NCBI GenBank assembly: GCA_002269645.1
Contig: NIVC01001259.1
Location: forward strand, 160,010-224,009
Origin: Macrostomum lignano
Taxonomy: Eukaryota
Direction of reading: 5' to 3'
DNA: 64,000 nt
Part shown: positions 1-63,292 of the stretch, piece by piece
How the letters are laid out: every line of letters starts with the position of its first letter
Numbering within the stretch: position 1 is the first letter of the stretch
Translations under genes and position numbers: made by a program
Notes under the pieces: generated by a model
The model's input: only the letters and a program-made list of their open reading frames with translations
Told to the model about the DNA's origin: nothing
The model's database searches: none

Positions 1-859
1 TGATGGAGGACGAAAGCTCTCGTAAGCATAGGATTTTTGGGATTGACTCATAGTTCATATTATTATAACTGGCGGGTTTCATTTTCACAATAGATATTCA
101 TAACTTATATACACTCAGCAACAGTCAAACCCGCCACCCTTGGAAATTGGCAGAGCGATTGACTTCAGAAAAAAATACTGTAATGATGAAAGGTTTCTTA
201 CTTTCACTTTGGTATACTATGTATGTCTAAGCAAGGTGGCAGTTTTGAATGTTGCTAAATATACATTGACAAATGGTATTATCACTTTTAAGTATAAAGA
301 AGCATTGATTTGAAATATACTATAAATCTATAGTAAATAATTTTCTTGAAAAAAAATTAAGTAAATAAATTAAGCTATTATAATAAAGTTATTAATTAAG
401 AAAATTTAATTAATAAAAGGTTTTTAATTAACTAAAGTATTTACTTTTAATTATTTGCCTGAATATTAAACTACTTAAAAACTCTCAATTTAGACTAAAT
501 AAAATATATGTATAATGATAGCTATATATAAGGTTAACATAGGTAATGATATAATTTTTTTGATAAAAATAGACTAAAATAAATTATATAATTAAAATAG
601 TCATTCTTTAATTCTAAGTCTTGATCTTAAATGACTTATAAGTAGGCCAATTCATATTGCCATTAAATCATACTAATAGTATACTAATAAGTCACTTACA
701 TGGAATGAAAGTTTATGTACTTATATAAGCTATAAGGCATATTATCATACCAATTTTGGCCTTGTTTGATAATAGTATAAGCAAGCCTTTAGACTAGGCT
801 TAATTAAAACCTTTAATAAATCTTTGTTTCATCTAGGGCAGCTTGTTAAAGGACTTAAA

Positions 860-17300: not shown

Positions 17301-18501
17301 GATACCGGAGCCTCAGTCACTCAGCTCCAGGTGTGTCAGATTGGGATCAGTGATACCGGAGCCTCAGTCACTCAGCTCTAGGTGTGTCAGATGGGGATCA
17401 GTGGAACCGGAGCCTCAGTCACTCAGCTCCAGGTGTGTCAGATGGGGATCAGTGGAACCGGAGCCTCCGTCACTCAGCTCTAGGTGTGTCAGATGGGGAT
17501 CAGTGATACCGGAGCCTTAGTCACTCAGCTCTAGGTGTGTCAGATGGGATCAGTGATACCGGAGCCTCAGTCACTCAGCTCCAGGTGTGTCAGATGGGGA
17601 TCAGTGGAACCGGAGCCTCCGTCACTCAGCTCCAGGTGTGTCAGATGGGAATCAGTGATACCGGAGCCTCAGTCACTCAGCTCCATGTGTGTCAGATGGG
17701 AATCAGTGATACCGGAGCCTCAGTCACTCAGCTCCAGGTGTGTCAGATGGGGATCAGTGGAACCGGAGCCTCCGTCACTCAGCTCTAGGTGTGAATGGGA
17801 ACTGGTCCCCATCGCTTCTCACCAAGCGCAGGGATTTCCAGCGCCTCCGGCTTCCTTGCAGCGGGCACCTCGTCCGAAACTTCGATGGTGATGTCCGGCG
17901 TGCAGCCTGAAATATTAGCGACAAATTTCTTTACGCACGAATACAAATCAAAATTCTTCCCAAAATCATGGCCAGTTCGGGTCTAGAAGCTTATTTCTAA
18001 GAAAAATCGAGTGCAGCGTCCTGGTACTTCAGTTTTCCATGCCTAGAACCTGTCAACACCGATGGCTGACGCACCTGGGAAGGCGGTCTGTCCCGCTGTG
18101 ACGGCCTCGGGCGACAAGTCGAGCTCTTCGCTCACCGACGGCGTCTCCTCGCCGGAATCTGAGCAGCTCAGCTGGTGCTCGGAGCCGCACCCGTTGCCGC
18201 CGCCGCCGCTGATGCAACCGCCGTCGCCGTCGCCGTCGCCACAGCCGACGATCACGGCACCGGCAGTCTGCTTGAGAGCGTCGTGCGCTCCAACCAAAAC
18301 CCGCTTCTTCCTCTTTGGCAGCTTCAGCCGGGCCTGGGCGTGCGTGTAGTACAGGGCGAAGTTGTTGACAATGATTGGCACTGGCAGGGCGATGACCAGG
18401 ACGCCGCTGATGGCGCAGACGCCGCCTACAATGTAGCCTGGGCGGCGGCGAGAGAGGCGAAGACGAGATTGCGGATAGTTAAGGCGGAGTTAGAGAGAGA
18501 T

Positions 18502-21500: not shown

Positions 21501-24500
21501 TGTGATCAGTCTATCCGGTGATCAGTCTACCCTGTGATCAGTCTATCCTGTGATCAGTCTATCCTGTGATCAGTCTACCCTGTGATCAGTCTACCCTGTG
21601 ATCAGTCTATACCGTGATCAGTCTACCCTGTGATCAGTCTATACTGTGATCAGTCTATCCTGTGATCAGCCTACCCTGTGATCAGTCTACCCTGTGATCA
21701 GTCTACCCTGTGATCAGTCTATCCTGTGATCAGTCTATCCTGTGATCAGTCTATCCTGTGATCAGTCTATCCTGTGATCAGTCTATCCGGTGATCAGTCT
21801 ACCCTGTGATCAGTCTATCCTGTGATCAGTCTATCATGTGATCAGTCTACCCTGTGATCAGTCTATCCTGTGATCAGTCTACCCTGTGATCAGTCTATCC
21901 TGTGATCAGTCTATCCTGTGATCAGGTCTAAAACAAGTCACAATGCTACCTCATAGCACAGCACAGTGCAGATGCCCCTGTGTCACATGTGGTGAGAAGG
22001 GCTAATTGAATTACCCTATCAACAGCCCAGCGTAGAAATCCTAGGCCTATACTATAACGACCCTAGGGATGCGAGAGTTTACCCTCCCTAGTTCTCCGGC
22101 CTGCCGCCCAGCTCATTAATTATTAATGAGCCCCCGGGTCGGGTATTCCGCCAGAGTTTAACACTTAGCTGGCCAATAGCCGATGGCTCTGATCTACTGC
22201 TGCTGCGCCGCGCCAGCACTGGGCGAAGGAAAACTTCACCATTTTTCTCCAATCTCTCCTCTTCCCAGCCTCAGAGTCCTCAGCATCATCTCGTTCTTAT
22301 CTCTTATCCCTATCTCATTCTCTTTGGTGGAGGTCTGGGCGCGGGGAAGCGGCATGCATAATGCAGATTCGGTCGCCCCCAGCAGCTGATGGCCCGATTC
22401 GTCTCTGTCGCAAGCCGCAGATGAAGACTCGCCGCCAGCACTGGCCCCAAACTGGTGGCTGATTAATTACTCCAAAGCCGAGTCGGCGGGGGTAAACATG
22501 GCCAGTAAGCTGACACAACCGCGCCGGCTCAGCTAGCTCCCGTATTTATGAGCCGCGTCGGTCAGGTGTGCGAGGTGAGACACCTTTGATCGGCCGGACA
22601 CCCTTCTGTCTGACGCTAGCATAGGTGTACAGTTTACTGACTTTGCACTGATTCCTGCGGTGCTTCGCCTATAGTCATGCCTTGTTATGCTGGGTGCAAG
22701 GAGGAAACCACATTAACTTGAGTTAGCGTCATTCTTGAACAAAAACTAAGCGATGAAAACAAGTTTGTTATGACTAGCACCCACCCCTACAGGCCCGAAC
22801 CCACAGCTGCACCCAGCCTGAGCCCACAGCTGCTCCCAGCCTGAGCCCACAGCTGCACCCAGCCTCAGCTGCACCCAGCCTGAGCCCACAGCTGCACCCA
22901 GCCTGAATCCACAGCTGCACCCAAACTGAACCCACAGCTGCACCCAGCCACAGCTGCACCCAGCCACAGCTGCACCCAGCCTGAACCCACAGCTGCACCC
23001 AGCCTGAACCCACAGCTGCACCCAGCCACAGCTGCACCCAACCTGAGCCCACAGCTGCACCCAGCTTAAACCCACAGCTGCACCCAGCCTGAACCCACAG
23101 CTGCACCCAGCCTGAGCCCACAGCTGCACCCAGCCTCAGCTGCACCCAGCCTGAGCCCACAGCTGCACCCAGCCTGAATCCACAGCTGCACCCAAACTGA
23201 ACCCACAGCTGCACCCAGCCTGAGCCCACAGCTGCACCCAGCCTGAGCCCACAGCTGCACCCAGCCTGAGCCCACAGCTGCACCCAGCCACAGCTGCACC
23301 CAGCTTAAACCCACAGCTGCACCCAGCCTGAACTCACAGCTGCACCCAGCCTGAACCCACAGCTGCACCCAGCCACAGCTGCACCCAACCTGAGCCCACA
23401 GCTGCACCCAGCTTAAACCCACAGCTGCACCCAGCCTGAACCCACAGCTGCACCCAGCCTGAGCCCACAGCTGCACCCAGCCTCAGCTGCACCCAGCCTG
23501 AGCCCACAGCTGCACCCAGCCTGAATCCACAGCTGCACCCAAACTGAACCCACAGCTGCACCCAGCCTGAGCCCACAGCTGCACCCAGCCACAGCTGCAC
23601 CCAGCTTAAACCCACAGCTGCACCCAGCCTGAACTCACAGCTGCACCCAGCTTAAACCCACAGCTGCACCCAGCTTAAACCCACAGCTGCACCCAGCCTG
23701 AACCCACAGCTGCACCCAGCCTGAGCCCACAGCTGCACCCAGCTTAAACCCACAGCTGCACCCAGCCTGAACCCACAGCTGCACCCAGCCTGAACCCACA
23801 GCTGCACCCAGCCTGAGCCCACAGCTGCACCCAGCCTGAACCCACAGCTGCACCCAGCCTGAACCCACAGCTGCACCCAGCCTGAGCCCACAGCTGCACC
23901 CAGCCTGAACCCTCAGCTGCACACAGCCTGAACCCACAGCTGCACACAGCCTGAACCCACACCTCCCAAGCTGAACCCACCTTGCCGGGCCCGCCAACGC
24001 CGGTACCCTCGACCTCGAGCAGCGCCCAGACCCTCGGCCGGACCCGCTGCCACCTGCCCAGCTCCGGCCCGGCGGCCTCCTCGATGCCAAACCGCCTGGC
24101 GGTGTCGCCGGGCGCGTCCTCCTCGCCGTCGTCGGACAATTCGCCGCCGTTGAGCTCGGCGAGGGTCTCCTGAGCGTCCCGGTGAGTCCGGTAGGTGGTC
24201 CAGCAGCAGGACTCCATCTGTTTCTCGTCGATGCCCCAGTAGGCCAGCTCCTCCTCGAACATGGGGCCGCAGATGTCCATGGGGGTGTGCAGCCGGCCGG
24301 TGCGGTAGTAGTTGAGAATCATGGCGAACACGCCGCTGTGCCGGTCGAAGAAGTACTCCCCGGTGTCCGGATCGAAGTCGGCGCTGTTCACCGAGGTGGC
24401 TTCGGCCAGCCAGGCCAGCCGGGTGTCCGGGATGTTCTGCAGAGTGGATTTGTAAGTCTCGAAACGGACTCCGCCAACATTGATGACGATTCGGTTCTCC

Positions 24501-24565
24501 GGCGGCCGCGACTGGCCGCAGCCGCCGCCCTGGCGCAGCGTCACCGAGGTTGCTCTGCTCACCAT
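8348..24565 (-). CDS. Shaw: Voltage-gated K+ channel, Kv3/Shaw subfamily (long isoform ~810 aa; short isoform ~739 aa ending at 11519)
   Basis: Exons (-): 24565-23981 (T1: [20 protein letters not shown], Zn motif HX5CX20CC), 20146-19519 (S1-pore: [30 protein letters not shown]), 18437-18075 (S6: [16 protein letters not shown]), 17906-17823, 15667-15476, 15175-15119, 13332-13196, then either 11692-11519 (stop) or 11692-11555, 9416-9347 and 8526-8348. All junctions are GT-AG and phase-consistent. An upstream in-frame ATG at 24616 is also possible. The core is certain; the C-terminal exons are less so. Confidence 0.92.
9961..11420. repeat. 14-bp satellite (agatcccagatcct)n built from alternating GATCCCA/GATCCTA heptamers
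   Basis: Near-perfect array of ~1.45 kb; same family as 58965-60437. Confidence 0.97.
11757..13160. repeat. 16-bp minisatellite (ctgcagtgacaactgc), ~87 copies, Kv3 intron
   Basis: Almost homogeneous array filling the intron between exons 13332-13196 and 11692; source of the 461-778 aa spurious ORFs. Confidence 0.97.
13433..13905. repeat. 45-bp minisatellite with 90-bp higher-order dimer
   Basis: Units alternate ...cactgatgcaagc... and ...cattgatacaagc... variants. Confidence 0.93.
14480..15052. repeat. ~44-bp minisatellite (gaactgtctatggcctagactgtcctactgacttaatcaatcgg)
   Basis: About 12 degenerate copies, ending just before the donor of the 57-nt exon. Confidence 0.9.
15788..17790. repeat. 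51-bp minisatellite, Kv3 intron
   Basis: Unit gtcactcagctccaggtgtgtcagatgggaatcagtgataccggagcctca, ~39 copies. Confidence 0.95.
18505..18588. repeat. (GA)n microsatellite
   Basis: Pure dinucleotide run. Confidence 0.95.
19008..19495. repeat. 28-bp minisatellite (tttacaggtgtcggattatcgaggagat)
   Basis: Direct tandem copies ending ~25 bp from the pore-exon donor. Confidence 0.93.
20160..20705. repeat. 15-bp minisatellite (gaggtggtcggtttt and variants)
   Basis: Graded variants starting just past the S1-exon acceptor. Confidence 0.93.
21372..21924. repeat. 16-bp minisatellite (ctgtgatcagtctatc)
   Basis: Direct tandem repetition. Confidence 0.93.
22797..23980. repeat. ~23-bp minisatellite (cacagctgcacccagcctgaacc)
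   Basis: The array abuts the T1-exon donor (23980), and its unit contains the donor-adjacent gtgggttcag on the minus strand. Confidence 0.95.
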
Positions 24566-24702
24566 GGCGGCTGCAACCAACTGTGCTTTGCTGGCTGAGC
24601 TCAGACTCTTTCGCATTACGGCCGCATCCGGCACTGCTTTGGCTAGGTTTCCCACCCGCCATTCCTCTGCAGCACCTATCCAGATGCGGCATCAGCAGCT
24701 GA

Positions 24703-48338: not shown

Positions 48339-48649
48339 TTTCTCAAGAGTAATATTACTTTACCTTTTCTGTAATATGCATATTTATTACATATATAATA
48401 TCTTCTTTGTTTTGCATCAATTCTTTCACCGGCTTAGATTTCTATAATTTGCTTGCTAATCAAAATTGACATAATTGCATTGTAAATAGAGACAAATTAA
48501 ATAAAAGTGCTGTGTTGATTGTCTGCAGTTTGGCTTTCTGCTTTTTGGCATGGTTTTTTGAATCGCTATAAATATTGCTTTTCAATTCAAGTCTTCAGTT
48601 AGCAGTTCAGACTGTGTGCGGACATAAAAAGTCTAAAACAGACCAATCT

Positions 48650-49970
48650 CCTGCATCTCACTGTACTCTCCTGCATGTCACTCTACTCTCCTGCATGTCA
48701 CTCTACTCTCCTGCATGTCACTCTACTCCCACTCCTGTATCTCACTCTACTCTTACTCCTGCATATCATTCTACTCTCCTGCATGTCACTCTACTCTCCT
48801 GCATGTCACTCTACTCTCCTGCATGTCACTCTACTCTCCTGCATGTCACTCTACTCTCCTGCATGTCACTCTACTCTCCTGCATGTCACTCTACTCTCAC
48901 TCCTGTATCTCACTCTACTCTTACTCCTGCATATCACTCTACTCTCCTGCATGTCACTCTACTCTCCTGCATATCACTCTACTCTCCTGCATGTCACTCT
49001 ACTCTCCTGCATGTCACTCTACTCTCCTGCATGTCACTCTACTCTCCTGCATGTCACTCTACTCTCACTCCTGTATCTCACTCTACTCTTACTCCTGCAT
49101 ATCACTCTACTCTCCTGCATGTCACTCTACTCTCCTGCATATCACTCTACTCTCCTGCATGTCACTCTACTCTTCTGCATGTCACTCTATTCTCCTGCAT
49201 GTCACTCTACTCTCACTCCTGTATCTCACTCTACTCTTACTCCTGCATATCACTCTACTCTCCTGCATGTCACTCTACTCTCACTCCTGTATCTCACTCT
49301 ACTCTCACTCCTGTATCTCACTCAACTCTTACTCCTGCATATCACTCTACTCTCCTGCATGTCACTCTACTCTCACTCCTGTATCTCACTCTACTCTTAC
49401 TCCTGCATGTCACTCTACTCTCCTGCATGTCACTCTACTCTCACTCCTGTATCTCACTCTACTCTTACTCCTGCATATCACTCTACTCTCCTGCATGTCA
49501 CTCTACTCTCCTGCATATCACTCTACTCTCCTGCATGTCACTCTACTCTCACTCCTGTATCTCACTCTACTCTCACTCCTGTATCTCACTCTACTCTTAC
49601 TCCTGCATGTCACTCTACTCTCCTGCATATCACTCTATTCTCCTGCATGTCACTACTCTCCTGCATGTCACTCTACTCTCCTGCATATCACTCTACTCTC
49701 CTGCATGTCACTCTACTCTCCTGCATGTCACTCTAATCTCACTCCTGTGTCTCACTCTACTCTCACTCCTGTGTCTCACTCTACTCTCACTCCTGTATCT
49801 CACTCTACTCTCACTCCTGTGTCTCACTCTACTCTCACTCCTGTGTCTCACTCTACTCTCACTCCTTTGTCTCACTCTACTCTCACTCCTGTGTCTCACT
49901 CTACTCTCACTCCTGTGTCTCACTCTACTCTCACTCCTGTGTCTCACTCTACTCTCACTCCTGTGTCTCA
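48650..49970. repeat. 20/24-bp pyrimidine-rich minisatellite
   Basis: ctcctgcatgtcactctact grading into ctcactcctgtgtctcactctact. Confidence 0.95.
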
Positions 49971-50764
49971 CCCTCTCGTCCACTCTCTTTCCTCCCTCTA
50001 GTCTCCCTACTCCTTCTCCTCTACCACCACTCACCTCTCTCTCTATACTTCTCTTTCCGTCTCTTCTTCGCCTCCCTCTCTCCCCCTTTTTGCAGTCCGC
50101 GACTGAAATTAGCAAGTTTTCCTGCTTGCTAAGTCAATGTGTCCATCTCACACCCTCTCCTCTCGCTCTCCCTTTCATCGCAGCTAGTTCTCAATTCTAA
50201 GAATTCCAATTGCATTGTTCAACTTGTGTGCCCACAACTCCATTGTCTGTTCTGGTGCACTGGTGATATTTGATATCCGATGCACTTCAGATCCGTGCGT
50301 CATAGCCAGCCGCTGGCGCTGCCCATCTGCAGAAGTCGGTATTAAAGAGCGTGGCAAGTCTGGAAAGCCGTCCTCAATTGAGTCAGACTTAAGCTTGGAA
50401 ATCGCCTCCGACTTTCCATATATGGAAGCCAGGGTATTCTCTAGCACAATCCAAATCTACACGCCAAACTTTTGAATCGCCCACCAGCCACAGAGACCAA
50501 CAAAGCCCCCCACGTGTTGGGCATTAAGCGCTAAGTCTCGAATATTTGACCTGTAAAATACGAGGTGCTCAAATTTATCCAAATCCATCTTATGCCCCAT
50601 GCATACTGTAGATTCTGAATTCGTGGGCGCGGGCTAAAAGGTATAGTGATTAAACAGAATATAGCTTTGAATATAGATTCAAAAGCAACTTCAAAAGAGG
50701 GAGTAGAGAAGCAAAATTTATTGAATTTGTAATCAAAGTCCCTTCAGTGGATGGAAGCGAGTAT

Positions 50765-51974: not shown

Positions 51975-52352
51975 CTATACTAGTTTGTTTAGGCTTAGGC
52001 TTAGTCTAAGGCTTATACTAGACTTTGTCTAGGCTTAGGCTTAGTCTAAGGCTTATACTAGACTTTGTCTAGGCTTAGGCTTAGTCTAAGGCTTATACTA
52101 GAGTTTGTCTAGGCTTAGGCTTAGTCTAAGGCTTATACTAGACTTTGTCTAGGCTTAGGCTTAGTCTAAGGCTTATACTAGAGTTTGTCTAGGCTTAGGC
52201 TTAGTCTAAGGCTTATACTAGAGTTTGTCTAGGCTTAGGCTTAGTCTAAGGCTTTTACTAGAGTTTGTCTAGGCTTAGGCTTAGTCTAAGGCTTATACTA
52301 GACTTTGTCTAGGCTTAGGCTTAGTCTAAAGCTTATACTAGACTTTGTCTAG
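51975..52352. repeat. 40-bp minisatellite containing TAGGC/TTAGGC motifs
   Basis: Unit ttatactagactttgtctaggcttaggcttagtctaaggc, ~9 copies. Confidence 0.92.
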
Positions 52353-52378
52353 GGCTGAACTTTCGTCTTGTAGGAGAT

Positions 52379-52678
52379 CGGGTTGTAGCCTAGTGGTCAG
52401 AGCGTCGGACTCACGACTGAAGAGTCGGGGGTTCGTTTCCCGATCCACTCGGAACAATTTGTGTCCTTGAGCAAGACACTTAACTCTGCATTGCTTCAGT
52501 TCATTCAGCTTTAAAATGGGTGCCAGCATTAGCTGGGGTAATTGAGGGTGTGTGGCGACACCCCAGTCCTTGGACTGAACAGCCGTACGCAGCCTTCAGA
52601 TGCGCCGCGCAATAGCTGCGGCTGAGCTGTCGGTTGCACATCTGCCCATTAGGGTAGGTGTAATCAATTATTACTATT
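52379..52678 (+). mobile_element. tRNA-derived SINE, copy 1
   Basis: Head gggttgtagcctagtggtcagagcgtcggactc...ggttcgtttcccgatcc has A- and B-box motifs; central gtgtccttgagcaagacacttaac...taaaatgggtgcc is CORE/Meta-like; AT-rich tail; highly similar to 58022-58323. Confidence 0.85.
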
Positions 52679-53146
52679 GTTAAGTCTGAGGCTTCAGCTT
52701 AGTCTAGAATTTATCTGAGGCTTAGGCTCAGTCATGTTTTGACAAGTGACTCAAAGTGACTGTGGTGACTCAAAGTTACTGTTGGATCCCCTCGGCTCAA
52801 ACCGTGTTTCAGCAGAAGTCAGCAAATTGCTCTGTTTGAGCAACTCTCCTTAAGCTGTGAAGAAACCAGAAGAAAAATGCAACACAGTTTGGCTTTCACT
52901 CCAAGCCCCATTTTTAGAACTTTGAAACAGCGCAACTTCAATAATAGCGTTGACCTTTCGCGAGTTGCATGTTTATATTTCTCATCAAATCGAACGATTA
53001 CCTACAGAGGCTGGGGCCGCACCTAGAGCACACTGCATCAAGGCGCACAGGCACAACAGCAATAAGGGACATTGGGGCTCGCTAATCGGTCTCAGGTTAA
53101 GTGACGATGGTCAGCTGGCGGCAGGTGTTCGCGTTGCCTTCGCTTC

Positions 53147-53593
53147 TCAGCCGTAGCGCATGATGTTGGCCCTGAGGATCTGGCCGGCCCTGTGCTGGTC
53201 GCCGGGCTCCACGCGGACTCTTGAATAGTGGAACAGCGGCGAGGTCAGGAAGTCTCGCTTGGCCTGACGGACCCGGCGACTCTCCAGCTGGCGGCCGTCG
53301 CCGCCGCTGCTAAGCCTCTCGGCCAAGAGGGTCGCTACTGCGGCCGAGGCGGCCGAGGCGGCGGCAGCGGCGGCGTCGGCGGCTGCCTGGGAGGCGCACA
53401 CGGCCGTCAGCTGGGCGGCGTCGCTGTCGGCGAGCTCCTCGACGCGCGGATGACGAAGCGCCTGCTGACAGGCGTCGTCACCGGCGGCGGCGGCAGGGAC
53501 GGCGACTGCCAGGGCGGCCGGCTGCGGCTGAAGGCAGGCGGACGAGAGCAGCAGCAGAGACAGCAGCAGGTGAGCAGCGATTCCTCGGGACAT
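53147..53593 (-). CDS. Neuropeptide precursor (148 aa) with a single C-terminal 34-aa RYamide, NKY-like
   Basis: Hydrophobic signal peptide MSRGIAAHLLLSLLLLSSAC, Ala-rich propeptide with two Cys, dibasic KR, then DFLTSPLFHYSRVRVEPGDQHRAGQILRANIMRY-G-stop (Gly amide donor). Intronless, with upstream TATA and CCAAT boxes. Confidence 0.85.
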   Translation of the reverse strand: MSRGIAAHLLLSLLLLSSACLQPQPAALAVAVPAAAAGDDACQQALRHPRVEELADSDAAQLTAVCASQAAADAAAAAASAASAAVATLLAERLSSGGDGRQLESRRVRQAKRDFLTSPLFHYSRVRVEPGDQHRAGQILRANIMRYG

Positions 53594-53698
53594 GGCCGGC
53601 TTCTCAGTTGCCTGGTTGCTTCTTCCCTCTTTCGAAAAATGCAAGAGTTTTCTCTTCAACAGTGAGAAGGCAGCGAAGGCTGCATGGGGATGCCAGGC

Positions 53699-53749
53699 TT
53701 TTTATACAGACTCCCCGCCTCATCAGTCCAGCCTACGCCATGATTGGCC
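53699..53749 (-). promoter_or_regulatory. TATA box and CCAAT box of the neuropeptide gene
   Basis: Minus-strand TATAAAAA at 53706-53699, with ggccaatca ~40 bp further upstream. Confidence 0.6.
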
Positions 53750-53971
53750 GCCTCGGCTCTTAAACAATTATTTTTCTCCCACGCCTCCGCCTCGATAATC
53801 CTAACTTAGGAGACAACTGGGGTAGTCTGAACTCTGCGTGTTGAAATCTGAATTTAAACACGTCTCTTGTACGCTCGTAGGAGCAGCTCCGACAGTAGCG
53901 ATTGAGGCTTCTTCATAAAACTGTGAAGAAACCTGAGTAGCGAAATTGGGCTGCATTTCACGGCTAGCAAC

Positions 53972-55205
53972 ATCACCTACCTGTCTATAGCACCATCACC
54001 TACCTGTCTATAGCACCATCATCTACCTGTCTAGCACCATCACCTACTTGTCCAGCACCATCATCTACCTGTCTATAGCACCATCATCTACCTGTCTATA
54101 GCACCATCATCTACCTGTCTAGCACCATCACCTACTTGTCCAGCACCATCATCTACCTGTCTATAGCACCATCATCTACCTGTCTATAGCACCATCATCT
54201 ACCTGTCTAGCACCATCACCTACTTGTCCAGCACCATCATCTACCTGTCCAGCACCATCACCTACTTGTCCAGCACCATCATCTACCTGTCCAGCACCAT
54301 CATCTACTTGTCCAGCACCATCATCTACCTGTCTAGCACCATCATCTACCTGTCCAGCACCATCATCTACCTGTCCAGCACCATCATCTACTTGTCCAGC
54401 ACCATCATCTACTTGTTTAGCACCATCATCTACCTGTCTAGCACCATCATCTACCTGTCTAGCACCATCATCTACTTGTCCAGCACCATCATCTACCTGT
54501 CTAGCACCATCATCTACTTGTCCAGCACCATCATCTACCTGTCTATAGCACCATCATCTACCTGTCTATAGCACCATCATCTACCTGTCTAGCACCATCA
54601 CCTACTTGTCCAGCACCATCATCTACCTGTCTATAGCACCATCATCTACCTGTCTATAGCACCATCATCTACCTGTCTATAGCACCATCATCTACCTGTC
54701 TATAGCACCATCATCTACCTGTCTATAGCACCATCATCTACCTGTCTATAGCACCATCATCTACCTGTCTAGCACCATCACCTACTTGTCCAGCACCATC
54801 ATCTACCTGTCTATAGCACCATCATCTACCTGTCTATAGCACCATCATCTACCTGTCTAGCACCATCACCTACTTGTCCAGCACCATCATCTACCTGTCT
54901 ATAGCACCATCATCTACCTGTCTATAGCACCATCATCTACCTGTCTAGCACCATCACCTACTTGTCCAGCACCATCATCTACCTGTCTATAGCACCATCA
55001 TCTACCTGTCTATAGCACCATCATCTACCTGTCTATAGCACCATCATCTACCTGTCTATAGCATCATCACCTACCTGTCTATAGCACCATCACCTACCTG
55101 TCTATAGCACCATCACCTACCTGTCTATAGCACCATCACCTACCTGTCTAGCACCATCATCTACCTGTCTAGCACCATCACCTACCTGTCTAGCACCATC
55201 ACCTA
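53972..55205. repeat. 20/22-bp minisatellite (tagcaccatcatctacctgtc[ta])
   Basis: Direct tandem repetition with recurring variant blocks. Confidence 0.95.
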
Positions 55206-55574
55206 CATCACGGCTAGCACAGCACCATCACTTGGCTAGCAACTTCGTTACGCCGTGAACAAAAAAGAACAAAAAGCTACATGTTTTGAACTGGCTGTTT
55301 TGAGCTTCCGAATATTCTATTTTCCGGCTTCCTCTATATTTCCATGCTAGCCAGAAATTATTTATAAATAAAAACAGCGTTTGACAATGCAAATGAGTTT
55401 GTGAGAAGTTCGGTATTGAATATGCGAGCTGTTACTGGGAAATCAAGCGCGAGAAGCAGACGAGTGCGCTTAGAAAACTAGGCGGCAGCTGCAGGTTTGC
55501 TGCCGTACTTTTAAATGGGCAATATTGTCAATATGGTGAGAAACATAGTGCAGTCTGTACTACAGGGAGCGGAG

Positions 55575-56708
55575 AGGCACAGCATGGGAGGCACAGGGTG
55601 GGGATGCAGGTGAGAGGTGGCGGGGGAGGCACAGGGTGGGGATGCAGGTGAGAGGTGGCGGGGGAGGCACAGGGTGGGGATGCAGATGAGAGGTGGCGGG
55701 GGAGAGGCACAGGTTGGGGATGCAGGTGTGAGAGATGGAGGGAGGCACAGGGTGGGGATGCAGGTGAGAGGTGGCGGGGGGAGGCACAGGGTGGGGATGC
55801 AGATGAGAGGCGGCGGGGGAGAGGCACAGGTTGGGGATGCAGGTGTGAGAGATGGAGGGAGGCACAGGGTGGGGATGCAGGTGAGAGGTGGCGGGGGAGA
55901 GGCACAGGGTGGGGATGCAGGTGAGAGGTGGTGGGGGAGGCACAGGGTGGGGATGCAGGTGAGAGGTGGCGGGGAGAGGCACAGGGTGGGGATGCAGGTG
56001 AGAGGTGGCGGGGGGAGGCACAGGGTGGGGATGCAGGTGTGAGAGATGGAGGGAGGCACAGGGTGGGGATGCAGGTGTGAGAGATGGAGGGAGGCACAGG
56101 GTGGGGATGCAGGTGTGAGAGATGGAGGGAGGCACAGGGTGGGGATGCAGGTGAGAGGTGGCGGGAGAGGCACAGGGTGGGGATGCAGGTGAGAGGTGGC
56201 GGGAGAGGCACAGGGTGGGGATGCAGGTGAGAGGTGGCGGGGGAGAGGCACAGGGTGGGGATGCAGATGAGAGGTAGCGGGGGAGAGGCACAGGTTGGGG
56301 ATGCAGATGAGAGGTGGCGGGGGGAGGCACAGGGTGGGGATGCAGGTGAGAGGTGGCGGGGGAGAGGCACAGGGTGGGGATGCAGGTGAGAGGTGGCGGG
56401 GGGAGGCACAGGGTGGGGATGCAGGTGTGAGAGATGGAGGGAGGCACAGGGTGGGGATGCAGGTGTGAGAGATGGAGGGAGGCACAGGGTGGGGATGCAG
56501 GTGTGAGAGATGGAGGGAGGCACAGGGTGGGGATGCAGGTGAGAGGTGGCGGGAGAGGCACAGGGTGGGGATGCAGGTGAGAGGTGGCGGGAGAGGCACA
56601 GGGTGGGGATGCAGGTGAGAGGTGGCGGGGGAGAGGCACAGGGTGGGGATGCAGATGAGAGGTGGCGGGGGAGAGGCACAGGGTGGGGATGCAGGTGTGA
56701 GAGATGGA
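55575..56708. repeat. ~38-40-bp G-rich minisatellite
   Basis: Unit gaggcacagggtggggatgcaggtgagaggtggcgggg with a ...gtgtgagagatggaggg variant. Confidence 0.95.
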
Positions 56709-58021
56709 AGGCTCAAAAGAAGCAGATCAAGAAAAACGATTAGGGAAAATCGATTTGGCTTCTTGGAGCCCAGGTGGCGATACTCGAAATGGTTCGGTTG
56801 CTACGGCGCTATAAAATTATTTTCACTTTGAAGTCTGGGAAAAACTCTAAAAATATCCTGGCGGCAATTTTTTTACAGCACAGAAACAAGCAGACGTGAC
56901 GGGAATGGTAATCGAGAGCTGCTTTCAGGTCTGCCCAGATACTAGCCGACATGTACTAAGCATCCCCCCAGTTTGACAATTCACAAGTACATGTGAACTA
57001 CACAATAAAATGAAGTACACATCTGGCTTCGAGGCTCGCTAAGGTCAAAACATCGAGCAAACTTAGCTCGTAGAAGCGAACTAACTAAACTCACATGTGC
57101 AAACTATTGATCGTTATAAAACTGGACCAAATATCCTCGCTTTAACAGTCGAACTACTCGTGCCAAGGGGGTCCCCCATCGACAGTTTTTTGCTGCGCCG
57201 GAACGGAGCAGCGCAGGCACACAAAACACCAGAACACGGTCCAACTTTTTGTTGCGCACCTTCTCAAACAAGAATCAAGTCGCCAGCCCTCCGGACCGTC
57301 CAGACATTCAACGATTCTGCCAGGTCGGATTTTCCCATAAGCGCCAGTGCATTCAGTACACCTCTGTGCGCCAATCAGCATTGCGCCTCGGTGCGGCCTT
57401 CCCAAGCCTCCAAATTTCATCAGCACGTCAACCTGACTTCGTTGGTCACTGGCCTTCACCCAGGCGGAGCTTCTGGACCTTCAACGGGTAGCATCAGTCG
57501 ACTATGGACATCCAAGCGAGATTTTCAATGGGCAAGTCGTCTGCTTTATTAAGGAATATACTAGTAGTAAAGGCTGGCAAAAGGCTGGTGTGTATATGTG
57601 CACTTGGGAAATCTTGAGAGTTCACCTGGCATATGATGATTAGGTCGGCTCATTTAACACCGGAGACAAAATTGAGCTTAGTGGCACATGCTGCATTAGC
57701 GATATTAGCAGGCGCTGCAGCATTGAGCCCAGCACACCTGTTGCAGTGCGTAGGAGTGCGTGCGAGAGAGAGAGAGACGCGAATGCGGGCGAGCCGTGCA
57801 GAATCCGTAAACAGCAAACAACTTCATCCCGAGTAGAGCTTCGTATCTCTAGCAATTAAAAATCCTAGAATAAACATTCAATAAGAGATCCCGAAATACA
57901 GCTCACACTTGCAGACATCCCAAAACACACGTTCCCGCCGGTAGGGTTGCCTGCGTAATAGGGTACTGAGCGAATACCAGCACAGTAAGAAGAGCGCTAC
58001 TGAAAAACACTTCAAACAGGG

Positions 58022-58323: not shown

Positions 58324-58964
58324 ATAACAGAAAAACAGAAGCAATTGACTTCTAGCTGCACCTGAGCAGAAGCAGCAACAACAAGCGGCAGCGACAGCAG
58401 GTGTGAAAGCCCAGAGACATCTCAGGTGAGGGCTCTAAGGTGGGCGCGGAGTGGCAGGTGGGTGACACACAATCAGATTAAATAATGAGAGATCCTAATT
58501 GAAATGAAGTTAATAAACTGAATTAAAGCTATTTAATCAGGAGTTTTGCCTATGGCGCAGCTTGCATTGGGGTGGGGGATGGGCAGGCCAAGGCCCTAAG
58601 CACTGAACCCTGTCACAATTTATCAGCTAATATTTTAATGTCAATTTGAAGATGACAATTCAATTTAATTAATTCAAACAGCTGGGATAAGTGAAATTAA
58701 AACATTTTTTGTTATTCTACACTTGATTTTTATCTGCAGTGAGAGACAATTTTGTAGCTCGTATAGGCTTGTGTATTTGAATCTCTGCCGTTTCCGGCAC
58801 TGCGTTCTGCTGCGTTAAAACAAAAATTATTTAAATAAGCGAGTAAAAACAGAGCCAAAAGCCAGCGAAATGCACAGCGCATCAGTGGGCTCAGAGCCTC
58901 CGAGTGAAATTCATTCATTTTTAATTTAATTTAATTTAATGTCCACCACAAGAAAAGATCCTCA

Positions 58965-60437
58965 ATCCCAGATCCTATATCTTAGACCCTAGATCCCCGA
59001 TCCCAAATCCCAGATTATATATCCCTGATCCCTGATCCTAGATTCACGATCCCCGATCCTAGATCTCAAATCCCTGATCCCCGATCCTAGATCTCAAATC
59101 CATGATCCCCGATCCTAGATCCTAGATCTTAGATTCCAGATCCTAGATCTTAGATTCCAGATCCTAAATCCTAGATCCCCGATCCCTGATCTCCGATCCC
59201 TGATCTCCGATCCCTGATCCCCGATCCCTGATCTCCGATCCCTGATCCCCGATCCTAGATCTCAAATCCATGATCCCCGATCCTAGATCCTAGATCTTAG
59301 ATTCCAGATCCTAGATCTTAGATTCCAGATCCTAAATCCTAGATCCCCGATCCCTGATCTCCGATCCCTGATCTCCGATCCCTGATCCCCGATCCCTGAT
59401 CTCCGATCCCTGATCCCCGATCCTAGATCTCAAATCCCTGATCCCCGATCCTAGATCTCAAATCCCTGATCCCCGATCCTAGATCTCAAATCCCTGATCC
59501 CCGATCCTAGATCTCAAATCCCTGATCCCCGATCCTAGATCTCAAATCCCTGATCCCCGATCCTAGATCTCAAATCCCTGATCCCCGATCCTAGATCTCA
59601 AATCCCTGATCCCCGATCCTAGATCTCAAATCCCTGATCCCCGATCCCAGATCCTAAATCCTAGATCCCAGATCCTAGATCCCAGATCCTAGATCCCAGA
59701 TCCTAGATCCCAGATCCTAGATCCCAGATCCTAGATCCCAGATCCTAGATCCCAGATCCTAGATCCCAGATCCTAGATCCCAGATCCCAGATCCTAGATC
59801 CCAGATCCTAGATCCCAGATCCTAGATCCCAGATCCTAGATCCCAGATCCTAGATCCCAGATCCTAGTACCCAGATCCTAGATCCTAGATTCTAGATCCC
59901 AGACCTTAGATCTCAAATCCTAGATCCTAGATCCTAGATCCTAGATCCCAGATCCCAGATCCTAGATCCCAGATCCTAGATCCCAGATCCTAGATCCCAG
60001 ATCCTAGATTCCAGATCCTAGATCCCAGATCCTAGATCCTAGATCCTAGATCCCAGATCCTAGATCCCAGATCCCAGATCCTAGATCCCAGATCCTAGAT
60101 CCCAGATCCTAGATCCTAGATCCCAGATCCTGGATCCCAGATCCTAGATCCTAGATCCCAGATCCCAGATCCTAGATCCTAGATCCCAGATCCCAGATCC
60201 TAGATCCCCGATCCTAGATCTCAAATCCCTGATCTCCGATCCTAGATCCTAGATCTTAGATTCCAGATCCTAGATCCTAGATCCCAGCTCTTAGATCCCA
60301 GATTCCTGATCTTAGATCCCCAATCCCAAATCCTAGATCCCCGATCCTAAATCCCAGATCCTAGGTCCCAGATCCTAAATCCCAGATCCTAGGTCCCAGA
60401 TCCTAAATCCCAGATCCTAGGTCCTAGATCCCAGAGT
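58965..60437. repeat. GATCC-heptamer satellite, complex variant of the 9961-11420 family
   Basis: A core of (agatcccagatcct)n flanked by derived units (gatctca aatccct gatcccc gatccta), ending ~10 bp from the PIGN stop. Confidence 0.95.
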
Positions 60438-60445
60438 CTAGTAAC

Positions 60446-63292
60446 TCAGAGTTGCCGACTCCTCTGGTGCAGCAGCAGCCTAGAAGCAGCTAGCAGAGCC
60501 ACAGACGCTACGGTTGTTGCCATGACAACTACATAGTGCCCGATGCTGGTCCCAATGTCCAGCCAAGAGCCGTGGTCTCGGATTTGCAAGAAGAAATGCA
60601 CGGCCAGAATGTCCGAGAACAGCAGCACCTCCAGCACCAGGAGCGAGCGGGCCAGAATGGCGAATGCCATGCCTACTGTCAGCATGGGCAGTAGTATCTG
60701 CGGGATGAGAAAGGCGATTATTTGGGGTGAGAAGGGCGATTATTTGGGGTGAGAAGGGCGATTATTTGGGGTGAGAAGGGCGATTATTTGGGGTGAGAAG
60801 GGCGATTATTTGGGGTGAGAAGGGCGATTACTCGGGCCAGTTTACTAGCAGTACAAACCCACCTTGATCAGCATCAGAAAGCCCATGGTGAAGGGGCTGA
60901 ACACAGTGATGAAGCAGTACACAGAGGATGTATCAAATCTGAAACAACGAAGGAGATGTCAATGAAGTTTAAACACTGATTTGTGAGATAAGCAAAAAAA
61001 CCAATAAGAGGTAGGTCGCTCACGAGTTGATGCTGGCAATGTTGCCTGTGCCAAAAAATGACAACAGCAACAGGAATACCTGATGCCCTGACAGAGTTAA
61101 GGAAAACTGCGTGGCAATTTATGTTGACAAAGACCTTCAAAGTTGAGTACCCGTATGAAAGTGGGACTGTCACATTTTTTGGTGACAGTCGAAATTGTGA
61201 CACTGCTTGTCACGCTTGTGACAGTCAGTTATTAATGTGACCGTCGATGTGACACTCAAATGTGACACTCAAATAAACTGTCACAGCTGTGACCGTCCAT
61301 GTGACAGTGAAGTACTGTCACCGCTGTGACCGTCTATGTGACACTCAAATACTGTCACCGCTGTGACCGTCGATCTGACACTCAAATGTGACACTCAAAG
61401 AAACTGTTACCAGTGTGACCGTCGATGTGACACTCAAATGTGACACTCGAAGAAACTGTCACCAGTGTGACAGTCGATGTGACACTCAAATGTGACACTC
61501 AGAAAAACTGTCACCAGTGTGACTGTCGATGTGACACTCAAATGTGACACTCGAAGAAACTGTCACCAGTGTGACAGTCGATGTGACACTCAAATGTGAC
61601 ACTCAGAAAAACTGTTACCAGTGTGACCGTCCATGTGACTCGTGTGTTTAGTTGTTTTGAGCAATGGTAAAAAAACTAACAATTTGGTAGAGTAATATTT
61701 CCGATGCATCATTTTTCTATCAAAGGTGGTATGGTTATTAGACATGTTAATTACGTGCCTCAAATTCCGTGCATAATCATCAAGTCAAATAAGTATTTCC
61801 ACGTGTATTGTTATACACATCTGCAATACAATCCACTTATCCAGTCAAGCACGTACATGCACGATATTTCAGGAGCAAACTAATAAATCAATCATAATCA
61901 CTGTTCACTGGCATCCCGCTTAGGAAACAATGTTGTACAACTTGGGTTCACATGACAACACATTGACTGTCACACATGAGACAATGAGACAGTTTTCGAC
62001 TGTCACATGAGTGTCACATCGACGGTCACACTGGTGACAGTTTCTTCGAGTGTCACATTTGAGTGTCACAATGAAGGGTCACATGTGATACAGTCATTTG
62101 AGTGTCACAGAACTGTCACATAGTCAAAATGTGACAGTGCCACTTTTATACGGGGTATCCATGATACACAAACAAAGACCTGAAAGTCAGTGGTCAATAT
62201 AGATAATCCACTAACAAAGACCTGAAAGTTAGAGGTTAATAATCCACTAGCAAAGACCTAAGACTTAGGCAGGAATTCAATTACAAAGACCTGAGGGTCA
62301 GGGGTCAATAACCCACCAACAAAGACCTGAGGGTCAGGGTCAATAACCCACCAACAAAGACCTGAGGGTCAGGGGTTAATAACCCACTAACAAAGACCTG
62401 AGAGCCAGGGGTCAAAACACCATTAGCAAAGACCTGAGAGTAAACGACCAGGGAATGACACCAAATATAACGGCAAGGATACAAAGCAGAGGTTCTGCCG
62501 CAGTCCGCCGCCCAGAGTCCGCAGTCCTCGCTCAACCGCCAGCCGCTCTTTTCCCAGCTTTGCGTCCGCCTCATCGGCGCTACAGTCTCCGTCACTGCCG
62601 TCCGCCAGCGTCATCAGCAGCAGGCATTCAATCCGCGTCCAGGCCTCCAGGAACACGGCCAGGGTCAGCAGGAACAGGCCCTCGTAGCTGATGCACATCA
62701 GTCCGTACACAGGCAGCAGCAGGGCTACGGAAGGTGCCAGGCCGGAGTACCCAGTCGCTGATTGGCTGACAGACACCGGCGAGAGTTGGTCCAGCCAATC
62801 AGAGGGAAGACAGCTGCTAGTAGGCACCCAGCTGGCGGCCTGCAGAACAAGCGGCTTGTCCCGGCGCGTGGTACACGGTGTGGGTGCTCACCGACATCAG
62901 GCCGGCCAGGAGGCACTGTGCGGCCTGCGGCGACCGGGGTGCGCCACTTTGATGCACTTTTGCAATCATTTGTATGTTCCGGCCTTCTTTTGGCCGTCTG
63001 CTTCCTTACACGCTACCTTGCTCTCGCCTAACATGCAGTGTCCCCTCTTTCCACCTTCCATCATTCTCGCATCTTCCTCATTCTCACATCCCTCATTCTC
63101 TCATCTCCATCACTCTCATCTCCCTCATTCTCATCTCCATCACTCTCATCTCCCTCATTCTCGCATCTCCCTCTCTCATACAGACCCCTCCATCTCACAG
63201 CACTCACAGACAGAGGTACAATCAGCTTGGCGTCCGGCTCAGATCTGAGGTAGGCAACAGAGTAGGCCGCTGCAGCAGCAGTGTTCACGGCT
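60446..63292 (-). CDS. PIGN: GPI ethanolamine phosphate transferase 1, 3' partial; one exon frameshifted
   Basis: Exons (-) 63292-63208, 62924-62483 (internal frameshifts), 61079-61024 (VFLLLLSFFGTGNIASINS), 60938-60863 (FDTSSVYCFITVFSPFTMGFLMLIK) and 60697-60446 (SDILAVHFFLQIRDHGSWLDIGTSIGHYVVVM) match the PIGN/Mcd4 C-terminus (FFGTGNIAS, YCF.TVFSPF, GSWLDIGTSISHY). The 5' part lies beyond the window. Confidence 0.92.
60715..60830. repeat. ~23-bp minisatellite in the last PIGN intron
   Basis: gggtgagaagggcgattatttgg repeated ~5 times next to the acceptor. Confidence 0.9.
61150..62155. mobile_element. ~1-kb non-autonomous DNA transposon with TIRs and TA flanks, in a PIGN intron
   Basis: Left ta|cccgtatgaaagtgggactgtcacatttt and right aaaatgtgacagtgccacttttatacgggg|ta; internal ~62-bp gtgacac/gtgtcac subrepeats are mirrored in both arms. 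Confidence 0.8.
62165..62445. repeat. ~36-bp degenerate minisatellite
   Basis: aaagacctgagggtcaggggtcaataacccaccaac-like units. Confidence 0.8.
63055..63175. repeat. Pyrimidine-rich 15/30-bp repeat in a PIGN intron
   Basis: tctcatctccatcac / tctcatctccctcat units. Confidence 0.75.

What the first reader, a model, noticed from the sequence alone, without database searches (positions are those of the whole stretch)
53147..53593. Candidate flatworm NKY-type (sNPF/PrRP-related) long RYamide neuropeptide
Seen: signal peptide, KR, a single 34-aa peptide ending ANIMRY-G-stop, and a clean TATA/CCAAT promoter. Recalled knowledge: annelid and mollusc NKY precursors encode one long peptide ending in forms such as ...KIMRYamide or ...KAMRYamide, one Platynereis form has an internal SRIEP similar to SRVRVEP here, and NKY activates an sNPF/PrRP-type receptor. 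It lacks the RPRF/RQRY end of NPY/NPF. The propeptide also has a Cys pair 24 residues apart that might form a second, disulfide-bonded product. Short precursors like this are often missed by annotation.
Basis: partly seen in the sequence, partly recalled or inferred. Interest (0 to 1): 0.72.

Follow-up and report, generated by a model that had tools for sequence, protein, structure and literature searches.

The report
Orphan flatworm RYamide peptide precursor gene

Summary
On the minus strand, 53593..53147 is an intron-less 148-codon ORF. It encodes a signal peptide, an Ala-rich propeptide, KR, a 34-aa peptide ending ANIMRY, then Gly-stop. A CCAAT box and a TATA box lie upstream. The window is Macrostomum lignano, so "flatworm" is correct. 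GenBank lists the protein as hypothetical protein BOX15_Mlig017662, in three near-identical copies.

Coding is supported by strong codon-position GC periodicity. It is also supported, weakly, by substitutions among the copies: 7 non-synonymous changes, all outside the peptide, and only synonymous ones inside.

The NKY assignment does not pass a test. The precursor layout and the terminal IMRYG match real NKY precursors. NKY profile HMMs give only 3-10 bits, all from the last six residues. The defining core motifs are absent. True divergent NKYs score z = 8-10 in the same shuffle test, where this peptide gives p = 0.03-0.3. Three searches of 1.8-5.8 billion proteins found no relative outside M. 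lignano. NPY/NPF, sNPF and luqin fail on defining features.

Best reading: a lineage-restricted, NKY-like long RYamide prepropeptide with family unresolved. Expression and the peptide itself are untested. NKY has already been reported in other flatworms. Interest is modest.

The parts
53743..53747 (-). CCAAT box, about 40 nt upstream of the TATA box
   Evidence: Read directly (ggcggCCAATcatgg). Function is inferred.
53699..53706 (-). TATA box (TATAAAAA), 106-113 nt upstream of the ATG
   Evidence: The 5'-partial GenBank model of the homeolog (P0003) begins 66 nt upstream of the ATG, about 40 nt downstream of the TATA box. That fits a transcript start just downstream of this element (inference).
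53594..53675 (-). Inferred 5' UTR (about 65-80 nt, 50% GC). G at -3 of the ATG.
   Evidence: Extent is inferred from the TATA position and the P0003 model.
53147..53593 (-). Complete single-exon CDS, 148 codons plus TGA. Identical to GenBank hypothetical protein BOX15_Mlig017662 (cluster P0001).
   Evidence: Codon-position GC periodicity p = 7e-7.
53537..53593 (-). Predicted signal peptide, residues 1-19 (MSRGIAAHLLLSLLLLSSA | C)
   Evidence: Hydropathy and the -3/-1 rule. In the AF2 model, helix 3-19 is followed by a pLDDT<50 break at residues 21-24. Not verified with SignalP.
53261..53536 (-). Propeptide/spacer, residues 20-111. 34% Ala. Holds Cys20, Cys42, Cys66 and an internal RHPR.
   Evidence: Together with the signal peptide it carries all 7 amino-acid differences between the window copy and L002.
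53255..53260 (-). Dibasic prohormone-convertase site K112-R113 (context RRVRQAKR|D)
   Evidence: Conserved in all three copies.
53153..53254 (-). Predicted mature peptide, residues 114-147: DFLTSPLFHYSRVRVEPGDQHRAGQILRANIMRY. Amidated monoisotopic mass 4041.10.
   Evidence: Zero non-synonymous and one synonymous difference within the peptide (S124) among copies. GC3 0.89.
53147..53152 (-). Gly148 (amide donor) followed directly by the TGA stop
   Evidence: cgc tac ggc tga. Smed-npy-7 also ends in ...RYG directly at the C-terminus of its prohormone.
52972..52979 (-). Possible variant poly(A) signal AATATAAA, about 170 nt after the stop
   Evidence: Inferred only. No canonical AATAAA is seen in the first 300 nt.

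Best explanation
This is a real, intron-less M. lignano gene for a small secreted prepropeptide, with three near-identical homeologous copies.

Inferred mechanism:
1. The signal peptide (about 19 aa) is removed on entry to the ER.
2. A prohormone convertase cuts after K112-R113.
3. No carboxypeptidase step is needed, because Gly148 is the last residue.
4. Peptidylglycine alpha-amidating monooxygenase converts ...MRY-Gly to ...MRY-NH2.
5. The product is a basic (pI about 10) 34-residue RYamide. It may be trimmed further at internal single Arg residues to shorter C-terminal RYamides such as AGQILRANIMRYa or ANIMRYa.
6. The peptide would act as a neuropeptide or hormone on a rhodopsin-type RF/RYamide GPCR.

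In precursor layout and C-terminal pentapeptide it works like spiralian neuropeptide KY. By sequence it is an orphan confined, as far as the databases show, to M. lignano. Descent from NKY is possible but not shown.

Shown here: the ORF and its motifs, the codon structure, copy conservation, and the lack of detectable homologues. Inferred: transcription, processing, amidation, neuronal expression and the receptor class.
For: - ORF anatomy.
- The organism is identified and the ORF is annotated as a gene in three copies.
- Codon-position GC is 0.76/0.56/0.83, p = 7e-7. GC3 is 0.89 in the peptide part, similar to the Kv-channel exons nearby.
- Between the window copy and L002 there are 7 non-synonymous changes, all in the signal peptide or propeptide. 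The KR-plus-peptide segment has 0 non-synonymous and 2 synonymous changes. That is the classic prohormone pattern, though Fisher p is only 0.11.
- The motif combination occurs once in the window against 0.01 per shuffled window.
- TATA and CCAAT boxes sit at sensible distances. The 5'-partial homeolog model starts about 40 nt downstream of the TATA box.
- The layout and the IMRYG end match curated NKY precursors.
- Internal monobasic trimming of NKY was seen by mass spectrometry in Lineus.
- M. lignano has a nervous-system PC2 homologue whose RNAi is lethal.
Against: - There is no direct evidence of transcription, neuronal expression or the peptide. The gene identifier Mlig017662 was not found in the searched literature or in one set of differential-expression supplements.
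- No homologue exists outside M. lignano, so there is no deep conservation to prove constraint.
- The three copies are 97.5-99% identical, flanks included, so the synonymous/non-synonymous contrast has little power.
- The region is 72% GC, so long ORFs arise easily. The antisense strand also has a 145-codon ORF.
- About 100 chance ORFs with this motif set could exist genome-wide (extrapolation).
- The 34% Ala propeptide is unusual for a prohormone.
Confidence: 0.6

Rival explanations
1. One reading: it is a bona fide, highly diverged orthologue or paralogue of spiralian neuropeptide KY (NKY). The N-terminal FWxPxG core has eroded in the macrostomorph lineage.
For: - It has the same precursor layout and a similar peptide length (34 aa against 35-45) as about 60 curated NKY/NKY-2 precursors.
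- The terminal IMRYG is identical to Platynereis NKY-2 and is within the family's [ILMFV][LMF]RYG range.
- MAFFT places DFLTSPL-FHY under K[VM]FWQPL-GY, and SRVRVEPG near the annelid SRIEPD and the brachiopod PVRVRLG.
- The residual N-terminal signal is marginal: p = 0.03-0.06 in some statistics.
- NKY is reported to exist in flatworms.
Against: - Full-precursor HMMs give 2.8-4.8 bits. Peptide HMMs give 9-10 bits, all from the last six residues.
- Other statistics give p = 0.14-0.31.
- Members from five phyla keep the core motif with z = 8-10.
- The diagnostic motifs and the N-terminal Lys are absent.
- The C-terminal half is predicted helical, whereas canonical NKYs are G/S/N-rich in that stretch (sequences).
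- An xMRYamide end is also found in unrelated sNPF-type peptides such as GSLMRYa, so it is not family-specific.
Confidence: 0.28
2. It is a secreted, lineage-specific protein that is not a neuropeptide, for example a gland, adhesive or reproductive secretory product. The KR and Gly-stop would then be incidental.
For: - It is an orphan restricted to M. lignano.
- The spacer is Ala-rich and of low complexity.
- There are no expression data.
- From general knowledge, unverified here: M. lignano is rich in taxon-restricted secreted proteins.
Against: - The four processing signals occur together in the right order.
- All amino-acid changes among copies avoid the KR-peptide-Gly module.
- The end is identical to known bioactive RYamides.
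Confidence: 0.12
3. It is a divergent member of the NPY/NPF family, which is expanded in flatworms.
For: - It is a long peptide (34 aa) ending in RY-amide.
- A C-terminal helix is predicted.
- Planarians have 11 npy genes, four of them ending in Tyr. Smed-npy-7 also ends ...RYG at its C-terminus.
Against: - The end is IMRY, not RxR[FY]. The flatworm signature NEYxAIxGRPR[FY] is absent.
- The peptide lies at the C-terminus after a spacer of about 90 aa, not directly after the signal peptide.
- The conserved intron in the penultimate Arg codon is absent: atc atg cgc tac ggc tga is contiguous.
Confidence: 0.03
4. It is not a protein-coding gene. The ORF would be a chance open frame in a GC-rich island that was picked up by an ORF caller.
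For: - The region is 72% GC, and a 145-codon antisense ORF overlaps it.
- There is no homologue and no Pfam domain.
- The window is full of satellite arrays that generate spurious long ORFs.
Against: - Three-base periodicity with GC3 > GC1 > GC2 holds on this strand (p = 7e-7), and GC3 is 0.89 in the peptide part.
- The ORF lies in a unique island, not in a tandem array.
- The GC-rich block is sharply bounded at the ATG: GC falls to 0.44-0.56 upstream. The fall on the stop side is more gradual, 0.52-0.62 over the first 150 nt.
- Promoter elements are present.
- The frame is intact in three copies.
Confidence: 0.07

Closest known systems
Neuropeptide KY (NKY-1 / NKY-2) precursors of molluscs, annelids, nemerteans, brachiopods and phoronids. 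Sequences from Thiel et al. 2021, PMC8557429, supplementary file 27.
   Same: - Signal peptide, then a 60-110 aa spacer, a dibasic site, and one long peptide at the extreme C-terminus.
- Ends in an aliphatic residue, M/L, then RYG. IMRYG is identical to Platynereis NKY-2.
- Peptide length is close to the NKY range (34 aa against 35-45).
- Internal single Arg residues could give shorter fragments, as seen for Lineus NKY by mass spectrometry.
   Different: - It lacks the core motifs FW[RQ]P[LM]G[YG] and G[YF]WIWMPAQG and the N-terminal Lys.
- There is no HMM-detectable similarity outside the last 5-6 residues.
- The middle and C-terminal part is not G/S/N-rich and is predicted helical.
- The spacer is Ala-rich rather than acidic and helical.
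- It ends Gly-stop with no trailing basic residues. Some mollusc NKYs also end this way.
Flatworm NPY/NPF superfamily (Smed-npy-1..11; Collins et al. 2010, PMC2953531)
   Same: A long amidated peptide with a C-terminal aromatic residue preceded by Arg. Smed-npy-7 also ends ...RYG at the C-terminus of its prohormone. Same phylum.
   Different: - No RPR[FY] end and no NEYxAIxG helix motif.
- The peptide is not adjacent to the signal peptide.
- No intron in the penultimate Arg codon.
Spiralian sNPF-type peptides (Platynereis 'RYa' GSLMRYamide/GTLLRYamide; Crassostrea GSLFRFamide)
   Same: The C-terminal tetrapeptide xMRYamide. If the precursor were cut after R141, the product ANIMRYa would be of sNPF size.
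   Different: sNPF precursors carry several short copies, each flanked by dibasic sites. Here there is a single copy, with no dibasic site next to the short form.
Luqin / RYamide
   Same: An RYamide end occurs in arthropod members.
   Different: Luqin peptides are short and sit directly after the signal peptide. Their precursors have a C-terminal Cys pair about 10 residues apart (general knowledge, not checked here). In this gene the peptide is at the C-terminus, and the Cys pair is N-terminal and 24 residues apart.

Membership tests
NKY (neuropeptide KY) | Precursor layout: signal peptide, spacer, dibasic site, single long peptide at the extreme C-terminus | tested here: met
   compared with the curated precursors.
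NKY (neuropeptide KY) | C-terminal ...[ILMFV][LMF]-R-Y-Gly amidation end | tested here: met
   IMRYG-stop, against KIMRYGK, KAMRYGRR, KLMRYGRR and LLRYG. The motif is not exclusive to the family: sNPF GSLMRYa has it too.
NKY (neuropeptide KY) | Core motif FW[RQ]P[LM]G[YG] (NKY-1) or G[YF]WIWMPAQG (NKY-2), as defined by De Oliveira et al. 2019 | tested here: not met
   The peptide starts DFLTSPLFHY. The HMMs do not align this region. With the last 5 residues removed, global-alignment p is 0.04-0.31 against NKY-1 and 0.03-0.14 against NKY-2. True members give z = 8-10.
NKY (neuropeptide KY) | Diagnostic N-terminal Lys of the peptide | tested here: not met
   The first residue after KR is Asp114.
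NKY (neuropeptide KY) | Statistically significant profile similarity to family members | tested here: not met
   2.8, 4.8 and 3.3 bits on full-precursor HMMs. 9.4 and 9.9 bits on peptide HMMs, from NIMRYG only. No NKY appears among the hits of an exhaustive phmmer search of 1.84e9 proteins.
NKY (neuropeptide KY) | Link through flatworm NKY sequences (parasitic flatworms in Koziol 2016; polyclad NKY1 in Piovani 2023) | not testable with these tools
   Those sequences are not in the held papers or supplements. The NKY profile search returned only mollusc and annelid fragments.
NKY (neuropeptide KY) | Activation of an NKY receptor | not testable with these tools
   The physiological NKY receptor is itself uncertain.
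NPY/NPF | C-terminal RxR[FY]amide (flatworms: GRPR[FY]amide) | tested here: not met
   The end is N-I-M-R-Y, against the Smed NPYs.
NPY/NPF | Peptide immediately follows the signal peptide | tested here: not met
   A spacer of about 92 residues precedes the KR site. Smed precursors are shown.
NPY/NPF | Conserved intron inside the penultimate Arg codon (Collins 2010) | tested here: not met
   Genomic sequence ...atc atg cgc tac ggc tga is uninterrupted.
sNPF / PrRP-type | Short peptides (about 5-12 aa), usually in several copies, each flanked by cleavage sites | tested here: not met
   There is a single copy. The nearest dibasic site is 34 residues upstream. Only the xMRYa end matches.
Luqin/RYamide | Short peptide after the signal peptide, plus a C-terminal Cys pair about 10 residues apart (general knowledge) | tested here: not met
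   The peptide is at the C-terminus. The Cys residues are at 20, 42 and 66 in the N-terminal half.
Amidated neuropeptide precursor (generic) | Signal peptide, convertase site, and C-terminal Gly as amide donor | tested here: met
   The combination occurs once in the window against 0.01 per shuffled window.
Amidated neuropeptide precursor (generic) | Expression in peptidergic (pc2-positive) cells and detection of the peptide | not testable with these tools
   No expression or peptidomic data were reachable. A PC2 homologue exists in M. lignano.

The most novel reading that the evidence does not exclude
The gene founds a macrostomorph-specific (or so far unrecognised flatworm) family of long RYamide hormones. 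It either arose independently of NKY or is an NKY descendant that has shed the whole conserved N-terminal core while keeping only the receptor-activating xMRYamide end. In the second case the family's function would reside in the C-terminal pentapeptide. M. lignano is transgenic and RNAi-tractable, so it would then be a handle for finding the still-uncertain physiological NKY receptor.
Probability: 0.3. Interest if true: 0.5.

Novelty: new member of a known kind. Interest (0 to 1): 0.3.

Why it matters
M. lignano is a genetic model flatworm, yet no catalogue of its neuropeptides turned up in the literature I could search. This gene sits in GenBank as a hypothetical protein.

If the 34-mer RYamide is real, it adds a candidate ligand for the large and mostly orphan RF/RYamide-type GPCR set of flatworms. 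These receptors are of interest as anthelmintic targets.

The case also bears on NKY, a spiralian family whose receptor is still disputed. The work here shows that "architecture plus C-terminal motif" is not enough to assign NKY membership. The practical value is a concrete, testable candidate: an exact mass, an RNAi target and an in situ probe. It is not a conceptual surprise.

Tried and rejected
1. Pfam scan of the protein: no family, even at E = 10.
2. Word-indexed homology search with the full protein: only its own cluster. With the C-terminal 49 aa: no candidate.
3. Exhaustive phmmer against 1.84e9 representatives: the protein itself plus two bacterial repeat proteins (a TPR array and a repetitive protein). 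Their scores are sums over 6-9 repeats matching VEPGDQH or the Ala-rich stretch. Rejected as spurious.
4. NKY-plus-Mlig profile against 5.8e9 proteins: five mollusc or annelid NKY fragments and no flatworm.
5. NKY HMMs and shuffle tests: no signal beyond IMRYG.
6. NPY/NPF, sNPF and luqin: rejected on defining features.
7. Smed-npy-7, the one planarian npy gene not listed with the conserved intron, was checked as a possible bridge. It is a standard GRPRYG NPY.
8. Flatworm NKY sequences were sought in Piovani 2023 supplements, Koziol 2016 and McVeigh 2009. None is held.
9. Gene identifier Mlig017662: not found in full texts or in one differential-expression supplement set.
10. The Cys42/Cys66 "second disulfide product". 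The single-sequence AF2 model is all-helical and of low confidence (pLDDT 69), so it is uninformative. The region is an Ala-rich spacer carrying substitutions, and a third Cys sits at the signal-peptide cleavage site. No support.
11. Amphipathicity of the C-terminal helix: not different from shuffles.
12. A second copy within the window: none.

Full report
**1. What is there**

On the minus strand, 53593..53147 is an uninterrupted ORF of 148 codons:
MSRGIAAHLLLSLLLLSSA|CLQPQ...(Ala-rich spacer)...ESRRVRQA-KR-DFLTSPLFHYSRVRVEPGDQHRAGQILRANIMRY-G-stop.

- The N-terminus has a charged n-region (R3) and a Leu-rich h-region (Kyte-Doolittle maximum 2.78). The best small-residue cleavage site is after A19.
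- A single-sequence AlphaFold model puts a helix at residues 3-19, followed by a low-confidence break at 21-24.
- K112-R113 is the only dibasic site close to the C-terminus. The 34 residues that follow end in Tyr, then Gly148, then TGA.
There is also a Cys20 at the predicted signal-peptide cleavage site.
- Upstream on the same strand are CCAAT (53747..53743) and TATAAAAA (53706..53699). A variant AATATAAA lies about 170 nt after the stop.

**2. Organism and annotation**

The exact protein is in public databases. It comes from Macrostomum lignano assembly GCA_002269645.1, contig NIVC01001259.1, and is labelled "hypothetical protein BOX15_Mlig017662". Two further copies exist on other contigs: L003 and L002 (proteins P0002 and P0003).

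The copies differ by 3-11 codons, and their flanks are also 93-100% identical over most of the aligned 1.5 kb. They look like recent homeologues, not transposon copies.

The model of the third copy is "5'-partial" and begins 66 nt upstream of the ATG, about 40 nt downstream of the TATA box. That is what an ORF caller does on a transcript whose 5' UTR has no in-frame stop. I take it as indirect evidence for a transcript starting just downstream of the TATA box (inference).

**3. Is it coding, and more than chance?**

The region is 72% GC against about 50% in the flanks. ORF length alone therefore means little, and the antisense strand also carries a 145-codon ORF. Several other lines favour coding:

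- GC at codon positions 1/2/3 is 113/84/124 of 149 (chi-square p = 7e-7). In the peptide part it is 0.60/0.40/0.89. Both resemble the Kv-channel exons in the same window.
- The GC-rich block is sharply bounded at the ATG (GC falls to 0.44-0.56 upstream). The fall on the stop side is more gradual: 0.52-0.62 over the first 150 nt.
- The gene lies in a unique island of about 1.6 kb between two minisatellite arrays, not inside one.
- An ORF with an SP-like start, a dibasic site, 9-51 residues and then R[FYW]G-stop occurs once in the window, against 0.01 per locally shuffled window. Extrapolated to the whole genome this still allows roughly a hundred accidental cases, so the motif set is suggestive and not decisive.
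- Between the window copy and L002 there are 7 non-synonymous and 4 synonymous codon changes. All 7 non-synonymous changes fall in the signal peptide or spacer. The KR-peptide-Gly module has only 2 synonymous changes. The direction is what one expects of a prohormone, but Fisher p is 0.11.

**4. Test of the NKY hypothesis**

I took real sequences from Thiel et al. 2021 (PMC8557429, supplementary file 27): 24 NKY-1-type and 8 NKY-2-type precursors from six phyla.

- a single long peptide lies at the C-terminus;
- the ends include KAMRYGRR, KIMRYGK and KLMRYGRR;
- Platynereis NKY-1 contains SRIEPD.

The layout and the end of the M. lignano protein fit. The rest does not:
- Full-precursor HMMs score the protein at 2.8, 4.8 and 3.3 bits.
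- Peptide-only HMMs score 9.4 (NKY-1) and 9.9 bits (NKY-2). The aligned residues are essentially NIMRYG.
- Shuffling the peptide with only RYG fixed gives p = 0.004 and 0.0008. With IMRYG fixed this weakens to p = 0.06 and 0.04.
- Global BLOSUM62 alignment of the peptide without its last five residues gives p = 0.04-0.31 against NKY-1 and 0.03-0.14 against NKY-2.
- In the same test, the most divergent genuine members (brachiopod, Dinophilus, scaphopod, oyster, octopus, phoronid) give z = 8-10, with no shuffle reaching them.
- The published diagnostic features are an N-terminal Lys and the cores FW[RQ]P[LM]G[YG] or G[YF]WIWMPAQG (De Oliveira et al. 2019). Both are absent.
- MAFFT does place DFLTSPL-FHY under KVFWQPL-GY. 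That is at most a trace.

Membership is therefore not shown. The claim that survives is "works like NKY in layout and C-terminus".

**5. Database searches**

- The full protein found only itself in the 5.8-billion-protein word-indexed search. The C-terminal 49 residues found nothing.
- An exhaustive phmmer run over 1.84 billion representatives returned the protein itself plus two bacterial repeat proteins. Their scores are sums over repeats.
- An NKY-plus-Mlig profile returned five mollusc or annelid NKY fragments and no flatworm.

The protein is an orphan at the sensitivity available. These collections seem poor in flatworm transcriptomes, so absence from other Macrostomum species is not established.

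**6. Other families**

- NPY/NPF. Planarian NPYs all carry ...NEYxAIxGRPR[FY]G close to the signal peptide. Their genes have an intron in the penultimate Arg codon. This gene ends IMRYG after a 92-residue spacer, and atc atg cgc tac ggc tga is contiguous. Three defining features fail.
- sNPF-type. These peptides share the xMRYamide end (GSLMRYa) but are short and multi-copy.
- Luqin/RYamide. These have a different layout.

**7. Receptor claim**

The Platynereis "NKY receptor" is an sNPF/PrRP-type orthologue activated by NKY at 420 nM, and also by FMRFamide. Oyster NKY activates the oyster sNPF receptor only at 3 µM. Both Yañez-Guerra et al. and Thiel et al. consider this probable cross-talk and regard the true NKY receptor as open.

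**8. Prior knowledge and novelty**

- NKY is listed among ligands already predicted in flatworms (McVeigh et al. 2018, citing McVeigh et al. 2009, Collins et al. 2010 and Koziol et al. 2016).
- NKY1 is expressed in apical-organ neurons of a polyclad larva (Piovani et al. 2023).
- "A flatworm NKY" would therefore not be new in kind.
- I found no paper naming this M. lignano gene or a M. lignano neuropeptide catalogue.
- M. lignano has a nervous-system PC2 homologue that is essential in RNAi, so the processing machinery exists.

**9. Verdict**

The most likely reading (about 0.6) is a genuine, lineage-restricted prepropeptide gene. It would yield a C-terminally amidated 34-mer RYamide or shorter C-terminal fragments, since R135 and R141 have basic residues at -8 and -6. 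Its family is unresolved.

- True NKY descent: about 0.3.
- Non-neuropeptide secreted protein: about 0.1.
- Chance ORF: below 0.1.
- NPY/NPF: about 0.03.

The Cys-pair "second product" idea has no support. Interest is modest. The finding is a useful, testable candidate in a model flatworm and a caution about motif-based family calls. It is not a surprise to specialists.

Noticed in passing
window 1-64000, e.g. 3023-4427, 9961-11420, 11749-13158, 15787-17793, 48647-49971, 53964-55206, 55586-56701, 58957-60435: The window is packed with long minisatellite arrays: units of 14-58 bp with up to about 100 copies. Most long mechanical ORFs without Pfam hits lie inside these arrays and are not genes (11568-13904, 16417-17520, 48575-50200, 55511-56716). 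The weak SLBB and Pentapeptide hits on 11568-13904 are repeat artefacts.
   Followed up: partly
window 19403-20095 (-) and 23744-24655 (-): These are exons of a voltage-gated K+ channel on the minus strand: Ion_trans (E = 5e-31) and a T1/BTB_2 tetramerisation domain (E = 3e-30). A 23/46-bp tandem array (22793-23980) overlaps the start of the ORF that holds the BTB domain.
   Followed up: partly
window ~60446-62788 (-), = L001 806-3148: A called gene with a PigN domain (GPI ethanolamine-phosphate transferase) lies about 7 kb upstream of the candidate, on the same strand.
   Followed up: no
window 53228-53665 (+): A 145-codon Gly/Arg-rich ORF lies antisense to the candidate CDS and in register with it. 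It has the composition expected of the mirror image of an Ala-rich coding frame (GC1 > GC3) and is probably not coding.
   Followed up: yes
L002 (NIVC01000853.1) and L003 (NIVC01001874.1) versus window 52000-55100: Three homeologous copies of the locus are 97.5-99% identical in the CDS. Their flanks are mostly collinear but are interrupted by indels or array-length differences 500-1200 bp upstream. This fits the recent genome duplication known for M. lignano.
   Followed up: partly
P0004, from the exhaustive protein search: A 1130-aa bacterial protein with a long TPR-like repeat array (unit ...YYKKALEIKPGDQHCESQLEKIAE...) reached E = 1.5e-6 against the query by summing nine weak repeat matches to VEPGDQH...QIL. 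It shows how repeat proteins can produce false "significant" hits for short peptide queries.
   Followed up: yes
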